Shown piece after piece: positions 9,582-64,000 of a stretch of 64,000 bases of DNA. The translations under genes and the position numbers were made by a program. How positions within the stretch are numbered: the first letter of the stretch is position 1; the number at the start of each line of letters is the position of its first letter. Under the pieces are notes generated by a model. It saw nothing but the letters and a program-made list of their open reading frames with translations, did no database searches and was not told the DNA's origin. Source of the DNA: Podarcis gaigeae (Eukaryota); assembly GCA_964106915.2 (NCBI GenBank), contig OZ066916.1. One strand, given 5' to 3'.

Positions 9582-9623
9582 GCAAGTGTCTTAAGTATGA
9601 GTATTGGTCATGTGTCTCAAATA

Positions 9624-9882
9624 CCGTATTTTTTGCTCTATTAGACTCACTTTTTCCCTCCTAAAAAGTAAGGGGAATTGTGTGTGCGTCTTATGGAGCG
9701 AATGCAGGCTGCACAGCTATCTCAGAAGCCATAACAGCAAGAGGGATCGCTGCTTTCACTGCACAGTGATCCCTCTTACTGTTCTGGCTTCTGAGATTCA
9801 GAATATTTTTTTTCTTGTTTTCCTCCTCCAAAAACTAGGTGCGTCTTGTGGTCTGGTGCGTCTTATAGGGCGAAAAATACGG
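9624..9882. mobile_element. Tc1/mariner-superfamily MITE (CCGTATTTTT TIR)
   Basis: TA-CCGTATTTTT ... AAAAATACGG-TA; homologous to 22020-22297. Confidence 0.8.
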
Positions 9883-12438: not shown

Positions 12439-12721
12439 ACGTCAGGTTTGTCTTGCTGCTGTTGGGAGTGCCCGGCAAAAAGCTCAAGAAGTTTGCCAGT
12501 TGCTTGGCCAGCCCCTTGGGAAGCCTTTGCTAATAAGGGAAGAGGAAGTGAAAGAGTGGGAGGGCCACCTCGAAAATCACTTGGTCAACACCCCAGACTC
12601 ACTGGGTTTGCAACAGAGACTCCAGAGTGCCACCATCTATGTTTCCTCAAGGGTATATGCTGTTTTTGAAATAAAGGGGGAAAGGAAGAGAAAACAAGCA
12701 GCTCACATAAATGTAAACTGA
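12439..12721 (+). CDS. IRAK1BP1: IRAK1BP1 coding exon 4 (terminal, TGA at 12719-12721)
   Basis: ttttgcag|RQVCLAAVGSARQKAQEVCQLLGQPLGKPLLIREEEVKEWEG...SATIYVSSRVYAVFEIKGERKRK; joined CDS 753 nt = 250 aa + stop. Confidence 0.93.
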
Positions 12722-13901
12722 TTTATTACTGAAGTCCTGAATCATTGTGTTTTCCTTTGGGAAGAACATTAGTCTTGGGAAGCTTAACTAGCTTTTCCTT
12801 AATCAAAATGTTAAAGTGACTCTGATGTTTGTTCACTTTTTAAACGATTCCATGAAATTGTAGCACGGGTTGTAATTCTCCGCACTTGGACGCAAGCTGT
12901 GGCTTGGATCCCAATTTATGTTTCATTTCTTCGAAGAAAACTTCTTGCCATGAAGAAGCCCTCGTGTTCATAGAAGACACTTTCCATTATCAGCACCTCC
13001 TTCCATGAATAAAACAAACTTTGGAATCAACCTAGTGAATGTGAAAGCCATAGATAGTACATTTTTAATATACTGTTTAGAATAATGTAAATACAGGCAA
13101 CTCCCAATTTACACAGGGGTTACGTTCCAAGGCACTGCACACTTTAAGTGAAATCACGAATATTTGAAACTAAAATATACTGTGAAAACACTAAATGAAC
13201 TAGTTTTTAAGAAACTGGTCTGCCCTTCTAGCGTGTTTCTGGAGCAAGGAAGTTTAAAGTTTTTGCTTGATAACTTAAGAGAGGTAAACTTGGAAGTTGT
13301 CTCCTACAACAGGAAACAGGAGCTCTTTGTACATGTGGATTATTTTCAGATTTGCAAATGAATGGAAGCATGCTTTCTTCACATAGGTCTTTCAGACCTT
13401 TGTATGTGGGGCAACAGTTTTGTCCAGATATCCAGTTACTCCCAAGTTTAAAGAATTGTATAAAGGCCACTTGGTTTTTCTTAATGGCTGATGACAGAAA
13501 CCACTTTTTTTCAGTGTTTTACACTGGACAAATTGCATTTGGTGAAATGCTACATTGTCAGTGTGGTTCAAGAAATCTCTGCTGAGAGTAGTTTTATCAG
13601 GGGAGAAATTCCTTGGATGCCAGAAGCTCCTGGCCTTCAAATATAAGGATGTGCATTTACTGCCTCACATGAGAAATTTCTTGAATATAACCAGTCTGAG
13701 TTAAGAAATTATGAATAAGAGATGGACATACTGTAAAACTGCATTGTTGCTGGAAAAACTTGCTAATTTTGGGGTGTTGGTGGTGAGACTAGGCAAGGTG
13801 TCGAGCGGTTTCTGCTTGAATAGTTTCACAGATTAAGGAATGCAGTTTAAACAAAAAGGATAGAACTTACAACTCTGCCTATAGTTTCTTAACTCCAATT
13901 T

Positions 13902-14427: not shown

Positions 14428-14476
14428 TTTAATAACCAAAGCAAAGCAGCTTAGAAAAACGAGTTTTCTATTTATT
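14428..14476 (-). terminator. PHIP: Candidate distal PHIP polyadenylation signals (AATAAA at 14471-14476; ATTAAA at 14428-14433)
   Basis: Hexamers on the - strand at the edge of a ~6.2 kb TE-poor, AT-rich stretch running from the PHIP stop. Confidence 0.45.
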
Positions 14477-17400
14477 TAAAAATAGGTTTGTAGTTACTAC
14501 ATTGCAGTGACAGTAATTCATACACATACATTCTAGTTTGTATAAAAGGATTCCAAGTATTATTCATCAAAACCAACGTAAGTGTTTCACATAACAATAA
14601 AAGTTTCGATCAATATGTACAAAAAGAAAGGGCACTGCTCATCCTGGTGTGAGACTGCACTTTATAACTTGATAAAGCAGAAGAGAAAGAAAATAACCTT
14701 GATAAAACCTAAACTTGTAAAACTGTATGTTGGTTACATGAACATTTTTGGGATTTACACCATACTGTACAAAGTAAGCAAAGCTTTAAAATGTGTCAGT
14801 TTCAAAATTAGATGTTCCAGACAATTTCCTTAAGTTACACTACATTATATGTTTCAACATTAAGTGGCAGGATTTAAGGTATTCACTCAACTTTCTTTTC
14901 AATTTTTGCAGTGTAATGGTCCAAAAATGTAACTTCAAAATGTGTGTCAATAGCCTATCCTTTTTAAAACATGCATCTGAGATAAATATACCATGTTAAA
15001 TGTCTTATGTGAAAGTGTAGAAGTTTGGTGCTGTATCTTTAAAGGGGTAGTAATTTCCAGCACTAATTATATCATGAACAAAAATTTATACCATATCCTG
15101 AAGCAATTATCTGCATTTATTTAAAATTCAAATATTCAGCATTTGGCTCCCTTTTTGGTATCAAAAGAAAAATGATTTTTCATATAAATAGCTCCTTAAA
15201 TTATTTACCCTTTAAAAAAGGCAGATTTGGGGTTTGGTCTTTAACAGCAAATATTATGCTATTTCCATCTTCAAAATGCCATCTCACATCTACGGTACTT
15301 TAACAAAAAATATCCTGAAATAAATGTAACCTTCCTGAAACAGAGGGTACCTTTTATTCCAAAAGGTTGTGAACTAAATGGGAAAATGAGAGCGACAAAA
15401 TAATTTTCTGCTTCACCATTATTCCAAGAGTAATATGTAAAGTTAGAACATTAAAAATAACACAATACCAGATTTTGTTATATTAGAAATAATTTTCAGA
15501 CTTGGCCACTATATATGAAATGTACATCTTTTTTGAATTATAAACATATGTACATTATTTACAGCAGAAACTGAACAGCCCTTTTATCAGATGAATGCTT
15601 AGGTCCAAGAACATGAAATGCAAGATTGATACATCAAAATGTACAACAAGGCTCAATCCAGTCGGTCCCTTACACACACTAGGACACAGCTGTCCCACAA
15701 GTGCACCTCTCCAGTTGTGGGAAGTCTGATGGCCGGTGTGGGTGAGATGGATGGCAGGAAACTCCTGCATGCCCTGAGGATGCAAGGCACGACTGGATTG
15801 TGGCCTTATGCTTTCATTAAATAGACCACCAGGAGCTCTTGCTTCAAAGCAAAGGATCCAGATTCTTCAGCACAGTAGGATCAGCTCTTTGCAGAAATCA
15901 ACACACTAAGAGCTGTGTGTATGGAGTTCTGGTTGGGGTCTTAATATCACTTTAGATGTACTGAAGCTCATGAAACTGAAAGCTCAAATTGGTATTTCAC
16001 AGAGTCGTAACACAGCACATGACTTATGTACTGAAACTATGTCCCCATTCATTTTTAAACGTTGAGAAGTACTACATGCTTTTGAATCGGTATTTTACAA
16101 AGATCAATCCAAACTAAGATAAAGTATTAAACAACACATGGAAAAATTGACAGTATGGTACGAATAATTTTGTGCGAGTTTACATCACAGCAGTACTATA
16201 GGAAGACGGGTTTTGTAAAGCTGCATCGCTACTCATACCACAATGATAAAGATCATTTCTTCAGTACCCAGTATTATACCAATGTAATTCAAGCTTAATC
16301 CCTGGGAAACAATTAAATTTCAAACCCGTTTAGGCAAACAAGGGATTGATTACTGGAGTGAAAATGAACTTATTTCCCAATCAAAGAAAATGGAATGTGC
16401 TGCTATCAGACATCGCTGTATAGTAACCACTGGTTAATATTGAAGTAATTTAATGTTCAGCATTATGGAACTAATGGACCGCTCTGTATCAGAAGCTGTA
16501 TCAGTAGACTGCATTTTACATTTGTTTTCATTACTGCCAAGTTTGTAAGATAATTGCTTGTGTGAATATCTGTAATTACCAACAGAAAGAGTGTCTACAT
16601 AGTATTTTCCATGTAAATGTGCCATAAAATAAATATTACTTTGCTCTCAATAGTTTTATCCATAACACATTTCATTATGGTTTCCCCCTCCAAAAGTTAG
16701 TGAACCAGTATTTATTGCTTATATTAAAATGTGCTAAATCAAAAGCTCTTCTGTGTTGGTACAATAAATTTTTTGCAAATCAGTCAAATCTAACCAATGA
16801 CAGTAATTTAAGTCAAACCAATGCAATTTAAAGCACCTATATAGTATATCTAGCACAATTACAGTTTTAAGTGTTTCTACACAAATGTATTACCAAAATA
16901 ATGTTAGAAAAAAATAAGCTTGTGAATTCTTAGTACAAAATTATTCATGAATGGGGAACAATACATTTGTGTACTGCAAATAAGACTTGGTTCTTTTGTT
17001 CTGAAATGTGTAATTTTCAGACACTATGATGGTGATGTGTACTATTCCATTCTCCAACGTTACATACACATACTTGATGTATACAAGTATATACATAAAT
17101 ATATGCCAAGTGGGACATAGTTATAAAAGGAGTAACTTACAGTAATGGGGTTTCATGTTTGCTTTGCCAATTTCTTTTATATAACAATGCAGATAACAAA
17201 AGGAAATCACACATTTGAAATTGATTGCCTTCATCAACAGTGAAATTCTTAAATGGACCAGATAAATCTATTGCAATGCTTCCATTGTGAAATGAACTAT
17301 CACTGTACATAGGCTGCTGAAATATTTTTATGTTTAATGTCTGCAATATTAGTAAGAATGCATGTTTAAAAACATAAGTCAGTGTCCCAAATCCCATAAT

Positions 17401-20400
17401 TATAATATGCTAATGAAAATAGGTATCCAAGGAGGACTAGTGCCAATAGAATTTATTATTCTACTGTAAATCATGATTTGGCAAATACTCTTAGTTGAAG
17501 ATATTTTCTTAAAAGCCAAACCAATATGGGTTATTTAGAGGAGATGGTGATGGCAACTAACCAACCAAAACAGAATCTTCCCTGCCTCCAAACATTCTAA
17601 ACTGGCCTGATCATAACGTCGATTAGTCTATTTCAAATAAAAGTGAATTATCTTTATGTTTATGAGTATTTGCGATAAAATCAGAAATGCATTTTAAGAA
17701 CCAATTGCCATGGACACAAACGGATGAAAGATGCATATTAATCTTGAACCTCAGATGCCATCAACTGTGAGCAACATATGTGCACTAATGAATTGAGTAT
17801 CAAGTTGCATACAAAGCTGTGTTGCATACATAGTTCCTGAAGTTGCTTCCACCTGCAGTCCTCAAACCCGGACTGGAAACTACATATTAACACAGACTGT
17901 CAATGCTGCCAAAATGGTAGACACACACAAAACATAAGATAACTGGTGCCGTTAACCTAGCTGTTTGGAGGGTAAGGATCTGAATATAACCTCCCAGGCT
18001 TCCCCTGATGGGGGAAAAATGTTAAAGGGGCTGCTTTATCACCTCTCCAAACAGATTATTGGCTCTACCATGTTGGCAAAACACAGCTAAACTTTAGGTT
18101 ACATGAATATAATACTGGTTTGTGACTATGTAACTTCTTTTTCAAAAACAATTCAACATGTAATATACAATATCATAAGGTGTAATTCCATAAATCAACA
18201 GAACATATTCTGATAAATTAAAGTCCAATGGATGGTCAGGAGAGACAGTCCATTCAGTTATTAATTTGGCAAACAGGCAATAACCACGATATGGTATGCT
18301 TATCCTGTGTTGTTCCACATCTCGCTGCTTTGAGGATTCTAGTGTTCTAGTGTTCCTTACATGTAGGTATCAGATGGAAAGCTAGAAAGTATGGCATGAC
18401 AAGGATTCCGGGATAATACCTTGTTTCGCCCAATCTGGCTTCATCAGCCGTGCGTACTCATATTCTTGTGTGCCGAAAACATGGAACATAATAGGTAGAG
18501 TTATGAGTATGTATGGCTGACAAAGCCTGATGGGGCGAAACAAGGTATTATCCCTGAATCCTTGTTGTGCCATGCTTTCAAGTTTTCCATCTGCTATCTG
18601 CATGTAAGGAATACTAGAACGCTAAAATCCTGAAAGCGGTGAGATGTGGAACACCAAAGGATAAGCATACCATATCGTGGTTATTGCCTGTTTGCCAAAT
18701 TTACAACTGAATGGACTGTCTCTCCTGACCATCCATTGGACTTTAATTTATCAGAATATGTTCTCTTGATTTATGGAATTACACCTTGTGATATTGTGTA
18801 TTACATGTTGAGTTGTTTTTGAAAAAGAAGTTACGTAGTCACAAACAGCCTGACGTTTTGTGTGTGTTGTTACCAGTATTATATTCACGTAACTGAAGGT
18901 TTAGCTGTGTTTTGTCAACATGGTAGAGCCAATAATTTGTTTGGAGAGGTGGAAAAGCAGCCCCTTTAACATTCCCCCACACACACCAGTGGAAGCATGG
19001 GAGGTTATATTTAGATCCTTACCATCCAAGCAGCTAGGCTGCCGGCACCAATTATCTTTTGAACAGGTATGTATACATCTGCATCTCTAGATTGAGGCTT
19101 ACTTCTCCCAAAGAGTGTTCAATGAAAAGTGTGGTTACATTTTTGTACCATGCAACTGTTTAAAGATGTATTTTGTTTTCTTTTAAATTGGACTATACTT
19201 TCAAACAATTGAAATTGTATTAAAGTTTGTTTTAATACAAACTTTGTTTTAAAGGTATAAAATAAGTAAATGTACCATAAACAAATAAATAACTGTTTCT
19301 TTTTCCATAGCAGTACATACAGCAATACATTCCCCTAAGTCATATAGTCATTTACAATAGACAACTTAAGTTTACTAAAGATGCACAAAATAATAGACTA
19401 CAAGGCACAATCATTAAGTGGGATTTTCCTTTAGGGTGTATATATTGACTTATGTCAGCTTGATAAGTACACTGTAAAAAGTGCAGAAAAACAATGTGCA
19501 ATGAGAACACTGTATAAAACATGATTGCATAAAAAGTGATTTGGCCTTTTTATCTTTAATAATTGAAAATAACCAATCTTCCCCTTAAAATAAAAGTATG
19601 ACATTTTAAAATTTTATCTAGTATTATCTAAAAAGTCCTGAAAAAAATTATTCCTGGGTAATATTGTATATATTTATGTGCTTGGGTACATAATATATAC
19701 ATACACAGACACTTTTTAAAATTTTAGTCAGTTTTAACACAATTTGTATAAACAATCAATCTGATCGCATCGTAAACATAAGAATCTCACACTTTTCCTG
19801 CAGTTTCCTTGAATCCTTTAACCCAATTATACATTTTGCCTAAGGATCCCACCAGTGCATTAATTGTTTTTACTACAAAGTACCAGTAGAGATAATTTTT
19901 CAGAACAGTGTATATTTAGAACATAGATTCATAAGCATAATTGGAAAATGTATGCTGCACTGACACTAAAAACTTTTCTACTGCACCGGTTTTCAGTCTT
20001 TGGCACAATAAACAGAGATTTGATTGATACGAGAATGAAGGTCTGAAAAATTAGACATATTAGTCAAACTTTTTCCAATGTGGATATATATATCTACATA
20101 GTGTGATTTTCCTCTCTGGCTGAACCTAGATAAACCAACAAGCTGCACTAGGTTTGTTTGTACAAAGCTGTGTGCCCAATTACTACTGAAATTAAACATC
20201 GTATTAGCAATGTTTGGAATTTTGCATTTGTTCTCAATGGCATTTACTGCCACACTCTGCTAATGTCCTGCAAAACACAGATACTACACTCTATACAAAT
20301 GTACTGTACCTTGCTCATTCAAAAATAGGAGTTCTGTTCTCAGTCTGTTACATTAAAAATTCTATCAATTTTAATCAAATAGAGGTTACTGACTGTCCAA

Positions 20401-20676
20401 AATTACAGTAACATTTCTGCAAATCAAGAATTTCCATTTATACAATCTTCAATACCAACTGAACAAAGTGAATTGAAATGTATAACCTACTTGGAGGGCA
20501 ATAAATAGCAAAAGTTTAAAATACATACTTCTTTCAAAGAAATGGTTCAGTTTGTTTTTGCTATACTTTTTCCAAATCAGAACGTATTCTCATTTGTAAA
20601 TAGCAGCAGAAAGCAGATATCCTTAGTTTTACCACTTCCTCAGCTGTACCTGTTTATTAGCATTTTTAAATGCTGG
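14450..20676 (-). other. PHIP: Probable long PHIP 3' UTR
   Basis: Follows the stop codon; no recognisable TE over ~6 kb, unlike the introns; AU-rich with Pumilio-type TGTACATA sites (14614, 15547). Confidence 0.6.
17936..19058. repeat. Long inverted repeat / giant hairpin (arms 17936-18462 and 18502-19058, loop ~39 nt)
   Basis: Arms are reverse complements at roughly 90% identity, including perfect 60-bp (18200-18259) and 44-bp (18263-18306) runs; 27-nt bulge in the right arm. Confidence 0.97.
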
Positions 20677-21350
20677 TTACCAACCAATGAGATTAGCCTT
20701 TGCTTTTTCAGTCAACTTGCGGACTCTGCCTCTGCTAGATGTCCCAAAAGTCAAAGAGGTGTCTTCAAACAATAGTTGTCTTTGCTCCTCCTCCGAGTCA
20801 TCTTCATTGTAAAAAGCTGTCCTCCTACCCTGATTTCTAGTTCTCATGTGGGGTTCAGAATCTTTCAGTTCTTCATGCTCTTCTTCAATAGGTTCATCTG
20901 TCTTTTTTCTCTTGCTTCTCGTCTGAATCTTAGGATCTGCAGAAAACGTAAGTTCTAATCCTGGCTCTTGTGCCTCTAGCTTTCTTTTAGGCTTTCTGCC
21001 TCCACGCCCTTTTCTTTGCAACAAGTCTTCCTTCACATTATTTTCAGAGAGAGAATTGCATGCAGTGGAAACGGATGCTTCCTCTGTTGTTGTTGTTGCT
21101 GTTGTTGTTGTTGTTAAGTCTTTAGTAGTCTGGATTGTGTTCTGCCCTAAATTCTTTTGCTGAGCAAGTAATAGGCTTTTTGGTTTCCTCCCTCTTTTCT
21201 TGTGCACCACTTCACAACTATTGTTGTTTGTTTCAATCTTGGGTTTCCGTCCAGGACCCCTCTTAAACATAGGCTTTGAAGACTGTCCCCCATGTCCGTT
21301 TACCTGTATGCTTCCTGATGCCAAAGGCATGACATTATTCTTGCAATCTG
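20677..21350 (-). CDS. PHIP: PHIP terminal coding exon (40)
   Basis: ...[55 protein letters not shown] is the PHIP C-terminus; NAGNAG acceptor (21350 or 21347). Confidence 0.95.
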
Positions 21351-21839: not shown

Positions 21840-22019
21840 CTGGGAGACAACAGAGAGAGCAAGAGTTAAGTTTTAAACAAGATTTTCAATTACTATGTAT
21901 TTGTTGGTCAAATAAATACATACCTTATTTCTTCTGAAATATATTTTCAACAAAACATTGTTGAAGGGCTCTATTTAAGATTATTTTACTCATTTATCCT
22001 CAGTCTATGGTTTTCTATA

Positions 22020-22297
22020 CCGTATTTTTCGCCCTATAGGACGCACTTTTCCCCCTCCAAAAATGAAGGGGAAATCTGTGTGCGTCCTGCGTCCTATGGG
22101 GCGAATACAGGCTTTCGCTGAAGCTTGGAGAGCGAGAGGGATCAGTGCGCACCGACCCCTCTCGCTCTCCAGGCTTCAGGAAACTATCAGCAAGCCTGGG
22201 AACCCTCGCGCCGGGCAGACATCCACAGCATGGAGATTTTTTTCCTTTATTTCCCTCCCCAAAAAACTAGATGCGTCCTATGGGATGAAAAATACGG
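22020..22297. mobile_element. Tc1/mariner-superfamily MITE (CCGTATTTTTC TIR)
   Basis: TA TSD and TIRs; homologous to 9624-9882. Confidence 0.8.
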
Positions 22298-22744
22298 TAC
22301 TTCCATGATTTACACAACCCCCACATCTGCTGACTGCATGGGGTCTGGAAGGAGACGTGGCTCTCTGTATTGGTGGTGGGTAGTATCCGAAGCCCCTACA
22401 TTCATTAGAGAAATGCTGGAATCAAGCCCTCTCTCTACAACAAGCCTGCAGCTGACTTAACTAAATTTGCCTCCATTGGAATCTGCAATGGGAAAGGAGT
22501 CAGGAATGAAAATTTTACATTGTGAAGGGAAAAAGGCAAGTTGCCCCCCCACCTCCCCCGCTAGCAGGCCTTTGGAAGCGGCAGTAAAATTGCCCCTTTG
22601 CACCCCCAACCCCACTCCATTTAGGATTGCATTCCTAATCTTCCTAATCTGAATACAAACATATAAATGTGATGTTGCATCTACAGCGGAAGCCATTATA
22701 TTTTAGGTTCCAGATCTGTGCCACTTATTAATAAGTTTACCCAC

Positions 22745-32967: not shown

Positions 32968-33149
32968 TTACAGATAGGTAGCCGTGTTGGTCTGCCATAG
33001 TCAAAACAAAAAAATTCCTTCCAGTAGCACCTTAGAGACCAACTAAGTTAGTTCTTGGTATGAGCTTTCGTGTGCATGCACACGAAAGCTCATACCAAGA
33101 ACTAACTTAGTTGGTCTCTAAGGTGCTACTGGAAGGAATTTTTTTGTTT
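32968..33149. mobile_element. Penelope-like element remnant forming a perfect 146-bp palindrome
   Basis: 13-bp TSD aggagaagacaag (32955-32967 / 33150-33162); terminus gttacagataggtagccgtgttggtctg and tagcaccttagagaccaact typical of reptile Penelope pseudo-LTRs. Confidence 0.75.
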
Positions 33150-50848: not shown

Positions 50849-51079
<231 letters not shown>

Positions 51080-51100: not shown

Positions 51101-51236
51101 CAATTATTTAACATGTAGCAAGTTCCAAGCATTCACTTCGCCAAATCCCATACAATGACATTTTCATCATGGCCATGATGAGATTCCTTACCATTTCAAA
51201 GAATCCTGATTTAGCATTACGTAAAAACCAGGAATC
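51101..51236 (-). other. PHIP: Diverged duplicate of PHIP exon 15 in intron 14, containing a candidate 45-nt cassette exon (51192-51236)
   Basis: Encodes HGHDENVIVWDLAK* (exon 15: [15 protein letters not shown]); ACAG|45 nt|GTAAGG at its 5' part. Confidence 0.65.
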
Positions 51237-62238: not shown

Positions 62239-62633
62239 TTAAGAAGAAACCAGGAGTTAAATATCCAATACTCTTCTGTTAATTTAGAAAACTATCGGGG
62301 GGTGATGTTTTGAAAAGGGGACAGTATTTGACACCTGAAATGCTTCTATGATTTCTAGTATACACAGCAATGAAAGCAGTATTTAAAGGACTCACATGCA
62401 CACACAAATAAAATCTAGACTGATTATTTCCCTAACCTCATGTTTAAAATATTTATGAATTTGAAAACAAAATTATTTGAATCACTACAGAAATAGCATT
62501 GAATATGCAGTATCATAATGAGTCAATTTGAAAACAAGATGACATATTTTAGTAATAGTATTTAGCATTAACATTAAAGTGTTTTGATAGTTAAAACACT
62601 GCACATACATAGGCCTGATTCATTTAATATGCG

Positions 62634-62769
62634 CAGTGTTTCCCAACCTTGTGCCTCCAGATGTTTTTGGCCTACAACTCCCATCATCCCTGACCACTGG
62701 TCTTGCTAGCTAGGGATGATGGGAGTTGTAGGCCAAAAACATCTGGAGGCACAAGGTTGGGAAACACTG
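62634..62769. mobile_element. Palindromic hAT MITE with perfect 58-bp arms
   Basis: CAGTGTTTCCCAACCTT...AAGGTTGGGAAACACTG; 20-nt spacer. Confidence 0.85.
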
Positions 62770-64000
62770 TGCTAGAGCACACTGAAGTTCCCTTGAACCT
62801 CCCTTACTCTGGCTGCCTCACAGTCTGGTTTGTAATGCTGTCCGAACCCAGGCTTGTGGTCTGTTTCTCTACAAACTAAGAGCAGTTACCAAAGTCAGTT
62901 CTACCAAACCAGGGATTGCAGTTTGTTTCTCGTCAAATCTTAAGCCATGGGTTTGTTGCTAACTTATAGATCATGACTTATTAGGGAGAAACAAACCAAG
63001 ATCCTTGGGTTTGGAAATAATGGAAAGCCAAGGCTTCCTAGATTGTTTACTGCACCAGAGGAGAAGCAAAGCAGGAGTGATCGCACAGTGTGAATTAGCA
63101 CACTGTTTATTTATAGTATACCACAATAAGCCAGAAACCCTGGCTTACCATTACATGCAAATGCAGCCAAATTTGGATCTGCAAAGACAGAACTGTGTAC
63201 TCTTTATATCTCAGCAGGGAAGCTTTTCCGTACTGTATTTTCCCTCTCAGTATGGACCCCATCATGCAATTCATGCACTTCTTGTTCAAATACTCAAACA
63301 GTATCAATTGTGATGATACTCTTTTTAACAACGGGTTTTCCCAGATGACTAGTTTATTATATATTAAAAGAATATTTTTTCTAATTTGTGTGCACATCTG
63401 CATGTCTTTTCTCTCAATAGCACTTAAGTTACAAGGTTATTATATTCAAAATGCAGGAAAATGCAGTACTCCTCCCCAGATAAAAATGTTCATTATTATT
63501 TTAATTGCCACATGAAAATGTCATTATCCAAGTTCATCAATCTACAGGAGACAATTTATGACGTAATCAGTAACAAGCAACCCAGCTTTCTCCCTTCTCA
63601 CTGAAGTAGTTGCACAAAAGATAATCTTTTTTTAAAAAAAGCTGATTTTTGTTTTTAAAGGGTCCTCCCTCCCCCTACCTTGCCTTTGTAGATGGGTGTG
63701 GTAGTGTTTTTCTCACTGCACTTTTGTCAACTGCTGCAGAACGATACATCTAACAGACTATTTTTTATAAAAGAAAAAGAAAAAGGTGGCACACCTCCCC
63801 CTTTCATACTTATATAGTGCACAGGAGAATATTTTGCTGTACTCACCGAAGTGAATGGATAAAAACCAATTGGGGCATGATTTGAATTAACACAAACTGC
63901 TGGATTTAAATGACATCACTAACTTTTTAGTAAGAAATTAAATTAAATTTGCAACAAGCTCTGGCCACACTTTGCATAACAATCAATCAAAACCAAAGTT

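What the first reader, a model, noticed from the sequence alone, without database searches (positions are those of the whole stretch)
17936..19058. ~1.1-kb hairpin in the probable PHIP 3' UTR: candidate vertebrate long-hairpin (hpRNA/endo-siRNA) or ADAR-substrate locus
Seen: arms 17936-18462 and 18502-19058 are reverse complements at about 90% identity, closed by a ~39-nt loop, with perfect 60-bp and 44-bp cores. There are no TIR/TSD hallmarks, and the arms resemble none of the SINE, L2 or MITE families in this window. The repeat sits in an otherwise TE-free ~6 kb stretch downstream of the PHIP stop. Known: ~500-bp dsRNA is a substrate for Dicer (Drosophila hpRNA pathway, mouse oocyte endo-siRNAs), ADAR, Staufen and the MDA5/PKR sensors, and long inverted repeats are normally unstable in DNA. 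Inference: this is a maintained, functional long dsRNA element that may regulate PHIP (editing, nuclear retention, decay) or produce siRNAs against PHIP or a trans target.
Basis: partly seen in the sequence, partly recalled or inferred. Interest (0 to 1): 0.9.

Follow-up and report, generated by a model that had tools for sequence, protein, structure and literature searches.

The report
Penelope-retroelement hairpin in lizard PHIP UTR
The long hairpin in this wall lizard's PHIP messenger RNA tail is most likely the leftover of a jumping gene (a Penelope-like retroelement) of a kind that often inserts as a mirror-image pair; it changes as fast as intron DNA, so it looks like a tolerated by-product, not a regulator.

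Summary
The inverted repeat is real (528 aligned bp, 90.3% identical, 39-nt loop) and lies in the PHIP 3' UTR of a Podarcis-like lizard. It is most likely a relic of a Penelope-like retroelement (PLE). Evidence: a 16-bp target-site duplication; an empty site in five non-lacertid squamates; a hammerhead-ribozyme-like core in each arm; a ~44-nt tail at one end only; and many diverged copies of the inner arm in a DNA run. No RT or endonuclease sequence was found. The element is shared by Podarcis, Lacerta and Zootoca. Podarcis later lengthened the stem by ~200 bp with an inverted copy of the right flank. The arms evolve at the intron rate, two to three times faster than the surrounding UTR. The core has flipped in this lineage, arms have exchanged sequence, and Zootoca lost ~200 bp. 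Probable-RNA contigs from a P. muralis-like species put the site inside the UTR and show a mild A>G/T>C excess, so passive ADAR editing is plausible but unproven. No evidence for an hpRNA/siRNA gene. The scan holds no such note on other DNA.

The parts
17906..17921 (.). Left copy of the 16-bp target-site duplication
   Evidence: Exact 16-bp direct repeat in L. agilis, near-exact in Podarcis and Zootoca; single diverged copy in Rhineura and Elgaria
17922..17937 (.). Original outer end of the left arm, left behind when the Podarcis extension was inserted
   Evidence: Continuous with 18118 in Lacerta and Zootoca, where it pairs with the end of the right arm
17938..18117 (.). Podarcis-specific stem extension: inverted copy of the right flank 18872-19058 (element tail, right TSD, ~130 bp of old host UTR); 207 bp in P. 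muralis/lilfordi, 27 nt of it deleted here
   Evidence: Absent in L. agilis and Zootoca at identical breakpoints; present in four Podarcis sequences
18118..18501 (-). Copy of the Penelope-like element that is continuous with the loop (18463-18501), read on the - strand; brought to the left side by the inversion of the core
   Evidence: L. agilis main copy aligns to window 18506-18080 from its first base; other genomic copies continue through the loop to 18493
18417..18447 (-). Hammerhead-ribozyme-like core (CUGAnGA, extra A, G10.1-C11.1 stem II, GAAA); stem II shortened to 3 bp here; helices I and III imperfect
   Evidence: Core and stem II intact in both L. agilis arms and in the Zootoca left arm; 0.27 chance hits per shuffled 64 kb
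18502..18867 (+). Inverted, 5'-shorter copy of the element (right arm)
18517..18547 (+). Second hammerhead-like core, catalytic box broken (G8 to A) in this genome
18868..18911 (+). [quoted passage not shown]
   Evidence: Between arm end and right TSD in all lacertids; loose ends of other copies carry its start
18912..18927 (.). Right copy of the target-site duplication
18928..19058 (.). Ancestral host UTR sequence, recruited into the stem by the Podarcis extension
   Evidence: Aligns in + orientation to Rhineura and Elgaria
14450..20676 (-). Probable PHIP 3' UTR (~6.2 kb) that contains the hairpin
   Evidence: Conserved blocks across squamates; conserved AATAAA 14471-14476; probable-RNA contigs end at ~14344, 14454 and 14531
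20677..21345 (-). PHIP last coding exon and stop
   Evidence: Open frame ending in TAA; 1,819-1,875-aa WD40/BRWD1_N gene called at the orthologous place in relatives; the name PHIP rests on my own knowledge of the C-terminus and the IRAK1BP1 synteny

Best explanation
A 5'-truncated Penelope-like retroelement inserted into a weakly conserved stretch of the PHIP 3' UTR in the ancestor of Podarcis, Lacerta and Zootoca, in the layout that PLEs often produce: a main copy with a one-sided tail, an inverted 5'-shorter copy next to it, and a target-site duplication (shown: junctions, empty sites, copies; inferred: PLE identity and target-primed insertion). Since then it has behaved as a DNA palindrome. 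Template switching probably added ~200 bp of stem in Podarcis, recombination between the arms flipped the core in the lineage of this genome and P. raffonei, conversion homogenised parts of the arms, and deletions trimmed it (patterns shown, mechanisms inferred). In PHIP mRNA it folds into a long imperfect duplex (predicted) that ADAR probably edits as it does other repeat-derived duplexes (weak hint only). It is tolerated, not selected.
For: 16-bp TSD and empty sites in Rhineura, Elgaria, Eublepharis, Candoia, Tiliqua. Hammerhead core in both arms on opposite strands ~70 bp apart, a layout reported for truncated PLEs (PMC4209133). Inverted 5'-truncated copy plus 30-40-bp one-sided tail is the described PLE layout (PMC8557442; with 8-10-bp TSDs in PMC3846280). 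DNA run: 62 contigs laid, 52 of them under 95% alike, with the extra depth on the inner arm; summed depth 67-460 there against 11.6 on the unique flank; other copies continue into different flanks, and one has its own inverted joint. Arm divergence 0.084/0.067 against introns 0.069/0.067 and UTR 0.029/0.032 (to Lacerta/Zootoca; arm vs intron P=0.21 and 1.0, arm vs UTR P=2e-9 and 3e-4). Loop flipped in window and P. raffonei; 14 both-arm changes among 99 inner variants; Zootoca lost ~200 bp including the loop. A young PLE-type palindrome with the same fold-back sits at 33004-33149.
Against: No RT or GIY-YIG coding sequence was found; no repeat library was available, so the family is not named. 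Helices I and III of the ribozyme motif are imperfect, loop 3 is not palindromic, and Rfam gave no hammerhead hit. The TSD is longer than the 8-10 bp in the cited PLE examples. I saw the motif after forming the PLE idea. Contig depth is not a copy number. The hairpin has persisted in all six lacertid sequences, and G-U-compatible mismatches lean to one element-relative strand in all four Podarcis.
Confidence: 0.72

Rival explanations
1. Same origin, but co-opted: the duplex is kept because it tunes PHIP mRNA (ADAR editing, Staufen binding, nuclear retention or decay), and the Podarcis extension was favoured.
For: A stem of 270-540 predicted pairs persists in all six lacertid sequences. Inner-arm G-U-compatible mismatches lean to the PHIP-sense strand in unflipped P. 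muralis (16:7) and P. lilfordi (12:7) and to the matching flipped strand in this genome (17:4) and P. raffonei (12:4). A>G/T>C places in probable-RNA runs 51:25, 49:25 and 45:26 against 32:27 expected from P. muralis genome differences (binomial P 0.016, 0.025, 0.076; Fisher not significant).
Against: Intron-rate evolution. The flip turned the wobble-friendly strand away from PHIP sense in this lineage with no visible cost. No bias in L. agilis (7:7). Zootoca lost the loop and about half the stem. Five other squamates have no hairpin here. A>G excess on the non-template strand is a known transcription-linked mutation bias (own knowledge). Editing of repeat duplexes is the default across animals (PMC5625713).
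Confidence: 0.12
2. The insert is a different mobile element (fold-back or MITE-like DNA transposon, or an L1/CR1-mobilised SINE with an inverted 5' end) and the hammerhead-like motif is incidental.
For: Long inverted arms; multi-copy; 16-bp TSD fits L1-type TPRT; no PLE ORF found; the window holds several palindromic MITE-like elements.
Against: The arms do not both end at the TSD (one-sided 44-nt tail). The loop belongs to a linear element, and other copies run on past it into other sequence. 16 bp fits no DNA-transposon superfamily I know. No poly(A) tail. The hammerhead core is rare by chance.
Confidence: 0.12
3. A true hpRNA/endo-siRNA locus: Dicer cuts the duplex into 21-22-nt RNAs that silence other copies of the element or a trans target; or the + strand (IRAK1BP1 read-through) is the folded strand.
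For: The duplex is long enough; the arms are complementary to other genomic copies, some of them present in probable-RNA runs; the + strand folds better in this genome (-855 against -782 kcal/mol).
Against: No small-RNA data; no separate transcription unit seen; the + strand preference is absent or reversed in P. muralis, P. lilfordi and L. agilis; no protein-coding target found.
Confidence: 0.04

Closest known systems
Penelope-like elements (EN+ clades Penelope/Poseidon, Neptune, Nematis); inverted pLTR insertions (PMC8557442, PMC3846280, PMC4209133, PMC11167929)
   Same: Inverted 5'-truncated copy beside the main copy, one-sided tail, TSD, hammerhead-like core in each copy on opposite strands, dispersed copies, reptile host
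   Different: No ORF remnant detected; TSD 16 bp rather than 8-10; tail ~44 nt rather than 30-40; ribozyme helices I and III decayed or atypical; not the Poseidon-type family seen at 33004-33149; clade not assigned
Repeat-derived 3' UTR duplexes edited by ADAR (inverted Alus; palindromic Harbinger repeats of Xenopus, PMC5625713)
   Same: Long imperfect duplex inside an mRNA, made by a mobile element, lineage-restricted, fast evolving
   Different: One self-inverted insertion with a 39-nt loop rather than two separate SINEs; longer (~530 bp); editing here only hinted at
Drosophila hpRNA / mouse oocyte endo-siRNA hairpins (own knowledge)
   Same: Long inverted repeat able to give a Dicer-sized duplex
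   Different: No dedicated transcript, no small RNAs shown, no gene target, no sign of selection on pairing beyond conversion

Membership tests
Penelope-like element | ORF with telomerase-like RT and GIY-YIG endonuclease | tested here: inconclusive
   No Pfam, homologue or Atlas match for the arm's open frames; a 5'-truncated terminal relic need not hold them; longer copies could not be fetched
Penelope-like element | Minimal hammerhead motif in the pLTR | tested here: met
   Catalytic boxes, extra nucleotide after A9 and G10.1-C11.1 stem II in both L. agilis arms; 0.27 chance hits per 64 kb. Helices I and III imperfect; no Rfam hit
Penelope-like element | Inverted 5'-truncated copy adjacent to the 5' end | tested here: met
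   The loop is part of the longer copy; the shorter copy is inverted
Penelope-like element | 30-40-bp tail at one end only | tested here: met
   ~44 nt, 18868-18911, slightly longer than described
Penelope-like element | Insertion with TSD and an empty site in relatives | tested here: met
   16-bp TSD; empty site in Rhineura and Elgaria; insert absent in Eublepharis, Candoia and Tiliqua
Penelope-like element | Dispersed copies in the genome | tested here: met
   Dozens of diverged contigs on the inner arm, with different loose ends; number not measured
Penelope-like element | Match to a curated family or clade (Repbase/Dfam, RT tree) | not testable with these tools
   No repeat library or vertebrate genome BLAST available
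Fold-back / MITE DNA transposon | Terminal inverted repeats ending at both TSDs | tested here: not met
   One-sided 44-nt tail; other copies run on linearly past the loop
Fold-back / MITE DNA transposon | Short TSD of fixed superfamily length | tested here: not met
   16 bp
hpRNA / endo-siRNA locus | Phased 21-22-nt small RNAs from the stem | not testable with these tools
   Only contigs were offered, no small-RNA or raw reads
hpRNA / endo-siRNA locus | Stem maintained by selection across species | tested here: not met
   Intron-rate divergence, flip, truncation in Zootoca; both-arm changes fit conversion
hpRNA / endo-siRNA locus | Complementary trans target gene | tested here: inconclusive
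   Only other copies of the element were seen; no genome-wide search possible
ADAR-edited 3' UTR duplex | Lies within a mature transcript | tested here: inconclusive
   3.5-kb contigs from three runs guessed to be RNA span the distal UTR to the poly(A) region; strand unknown; none spans the hairpin
ADAR-edited 3' UTR duplex | A-to-G changes in RNA absent from the same animal's DNA | tested here: inconclusive
   Mild A>G/T>C excess; T18066C (UAG on the - strand) in three runs and A17975G, A17983G in one, none in six genomes; but unexplained non-editing differences (C17612G, C18087A) recur too, and there is no matched DNA

The most novel reading that the evidence does not exclude
A PLE-born palindrome that has been co-opted, and lengthened in Podarcis by copying host UTR, as an ADAR/Staufen- or Dicer-dependent control element of PHIP: a vertebrate case of a regulatory long hairpin growing stepwise by inverted duplication.
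Probability: 0.12. Interest if true: 0.6.

Novelty: new member of a known kind. Interest (0 to 1): 0.22.

Why it matters
As it stands it is ordinary retroelement debris, but a clean example. It suggests that PLEs, which mammals and birds lack, can place ready-made ~400-500-bp duplexes in reptile mRNAs in a single insertion, and that such a duplex has been tolerated in a conserved gene's UTR across three lacertid genera. It also carries a warning for genome scans: in a long DNA palindrome, both-arm 'compensatory' changes and strand-biased G-U pairs arise from conversion and core inversion, so they are not evidence of RNA function. The natural series (no hairpin, truncated, ~375 bp, ~530-560 bp, flipped) could be used to ask how reptiles handle self-dsRNA.

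Tried and rejected
Rfam: nothing at gathering threshold in the window; only generic miRNA-shaped hairpin hits far below threshold on the stem tip, and no hammerhead. Coding origin or endogenous virus: the arm's open frames gave no Pfam, homologue or Atlas match; one further Pfam call failed on a frame error and was not repeated. Pure local duplication of host UTR: rejected, because only the outer ~130 bp are ancestral. Assembly artefact: rejected. hAT insertion with an 8-bp TSD: first suspected, dropped when the duplication proved to be 16 bp. Folding on the + strand: real bias in this genome (17:4 inner, P=0.007) but it follows the inversion and is not shared by unflipped species. Hemicordylus and Varanus loci did not reach the site. 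No paper links PHIP, an inverted repeat and editing, and none of the four hits on Penelope elements in lacertids described this family by title or abstract. The spliced IRAK1BP1 model was not joined: one exon was searched by reference and orthologues were fetched by the returned protein ids.

Full report
Observation. The repeat is as described: arms 17933-18462 and 18502-19061, 477 matches and 51 mismatches (90.3%), perfect runs of 60 and 44 bp, and a 39-nt loop. Either strand folds into one stem of about 500 pairs. There is no second copy in the window. PHIP is on the - strand with its stop at 20679-20677, and IRAK1BP1 (SIMPL domain) is on the + strand and ends near 12721. The window is about 95-96% identical to P. 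muralis and P. lilfordi and closest to P. raffonei, so it comes from a Podarcis-like lacertid.

Orthologues. I fetched twelve squamate loci through IRAK1BP1. The UTR is conserved in blocks from about 14400 to the stop, with an invariant AATAAA at 14471-14476 on the - strand. Rhineura and Elgaria join window 17911 directly to 18921, and Eublepharis, Candoia and Tiliqua are too short at this place to hold the insert; none has a hairpin here. All lacertids carry the insert between two copies of a 16-bp sequence, identical in L. agilis. The hairpin is therefore an insertion with a target-site duplication, made after the split from amphisbaenians and before Podarcis, Lacerta and Zootoca separated.

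What was inserted. In L. agilis the insert is about 820 bp: a ~375-bp arm, the loop, the second arm, and a ~44-nt tail at the right end only. Near the loop each arm holds a hammerhead-like core: CUGACGA, one extra A, a G10.1-C11.1 stem II and GAAA. It is intact in both L. agilis arms and one Zootoca arm and decayed in Podarcis. The descriptor gives 0.27 hits per shuffled 64 kb, and most of its other hits in these loci are young Poseidon-type PLE fragments. Helices I and III are imperfect, so I call it a motif, not a working ribozyme. Minimal hammerheads mark PLE pLTRs, including pairs 100-700 bp apart on opposite strands (PMC4209133). An inverted 5'-truncated copy and a 30-40-bp one-sided tail are the described PLE layout (PMC8557442; PMC3846280; tail mechanism in PMC11167929). 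In a DNA run from another sample of this species the flank shows one contig at depth 11.6 and the outer arm two copies, while most of the 62 contigs laid fall on the inner arm, 52 of them under 95% alike, with many different loose ends. Some copies include the loop and run on beyond it, so the loop belongs to a linear element; another copy has its own inverted joint. No RT or endonuclease sequence was found, so PLE identity is inferred from anatomy and the clade is not assigned.

Later history. Podarcis inserted a 207-bp inverted copy of the right flank (tail, TSD and ~130 bp of old UTR) into the left arm, lengthening the stem to 530-560 bp; Lacerta and Zootoca lack it at identical breakpoints and their left arm end pairs continuously, so gain in Podarcis is the simpler reading. 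This genome and P. raffonei then lost part of that piece. The loop is reversed in this genome and P. raffonei relative to P. muralis, P. lilfordi and L. agilis, and the window's left arm is closer to their right arm (0.043-0.061) than to their left (0.086-0.089), so most of the core was inverted. Fourteen of 99 inner variants occur in both arms of one species, the Zootoca arms are 99% identical, and Lacerta and Zootoca arms group by species in a tree of the outer 200 columns of the inner arm: arm-to-arm conversion. Zootoca lost about 200 bp including the loop.

Selection. Against L. agilis and Zootoca the inner arms differ at 0.084 and 0.067 of sites, introns at 0.069 and 0.067, and the rest of the UTR at 0.029 and 0.032. 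The arms are indistinguishable from introns and clearly faster than the UTR. Arm-to-arm divergence of about 9% in Podarcis is no lower than independent drift since the lacertid split would give. It therefore does not show folding antisense to PHIP. The lean toward the PHIP-sense strand in unflipped Podarcis could be transcription-linked mutation bias (own knowledge) or weak selection for pairing; this is the best remaining support for co-option.

Expression and editing. Three runs guessed to be RNA, from a species matching P. muralis, each give a 3.5-kb contig from the hairpin edge to about 14344, 14454 and 14531, around the poly(A) signal. That fits a 6.2-kb PHIP UTR running through the hairpin, but strand is unknown and no contig spans the stem. 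A>G plus T>C places outnumber G>A plus C>T by 51:25, 49:25 and 45:26, against 32:27 expected from the P. muralis genome (binomial P 0.016, 0.025, 0.076; Fisher not significant), while the DNA run shows no excess. T18066C, a UAG on the PHIP strand, appears in all three runs and in none of six genomes; but other unexplained differences recur as well, other copies of the element contribute, 133 rows were not shown, and there is no matched DNA. Editing is plausible, as for other repeat duplexes (PMC5625713), but not shown. Small RNAs could not be tested.

Verdict. A retroelement relic, most likely Penelope-like, that forms a long hairpin as a by-product of its insertion and has since been reshaped by ordinary palindrome instability. 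It may work like an inverted-Alu editing substrate; it does not meet the tests for an hpRNA gene that could be run. New member of a known kind, interest 0.22.

Noticed in passing
window 33004-33149: Perfect 146-bp palindrome from a young Poseidon-type Penelope element; its centre lies in the hammerhead stem II loop, which suggests fold-back priming at that hairpin. The same family occurs singly in L002, L005 and L008.
   Followed up: partly
window 62631-62772, 9621-9880 and 22017-22299: Other palindromic, MITE-like repeats; the last two are related to each other and have terminal inverted repeats.
   Followed up: no
window 50902-50981 and 51102-51175: Direct repeat at 77.5% next to a PHIP exon, matching the relic exon duplicate of note s1-670752.
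   Followed up: no
window 9582-9583: IRAK1BP1 exon 2 appears to end in a GC donor; relatives have a 228-aa isoform, 22 aa shorter, which matches skipping of this exon.
   Followed up: no
window 19060-20670: The proximal PHIP 3' UTR is more conserved than the last coding exon (0.057 against 0.082 to Rhineura; 0.021 against 0.032 to L. agilis): strong unexplained constraint.
   Followed up: partly
L012 6898-8174 and 13396-14666 (Tiliqua): A 1.28-kb inverted pair at 96% identity flanking IRAK1BP1 exon 1.
   Followed up: no
window 13087-13477: About 390 bp present here and in Lacerta and Zootoca but missing in P. muralis and P. lilfordi.
   Followed up: no
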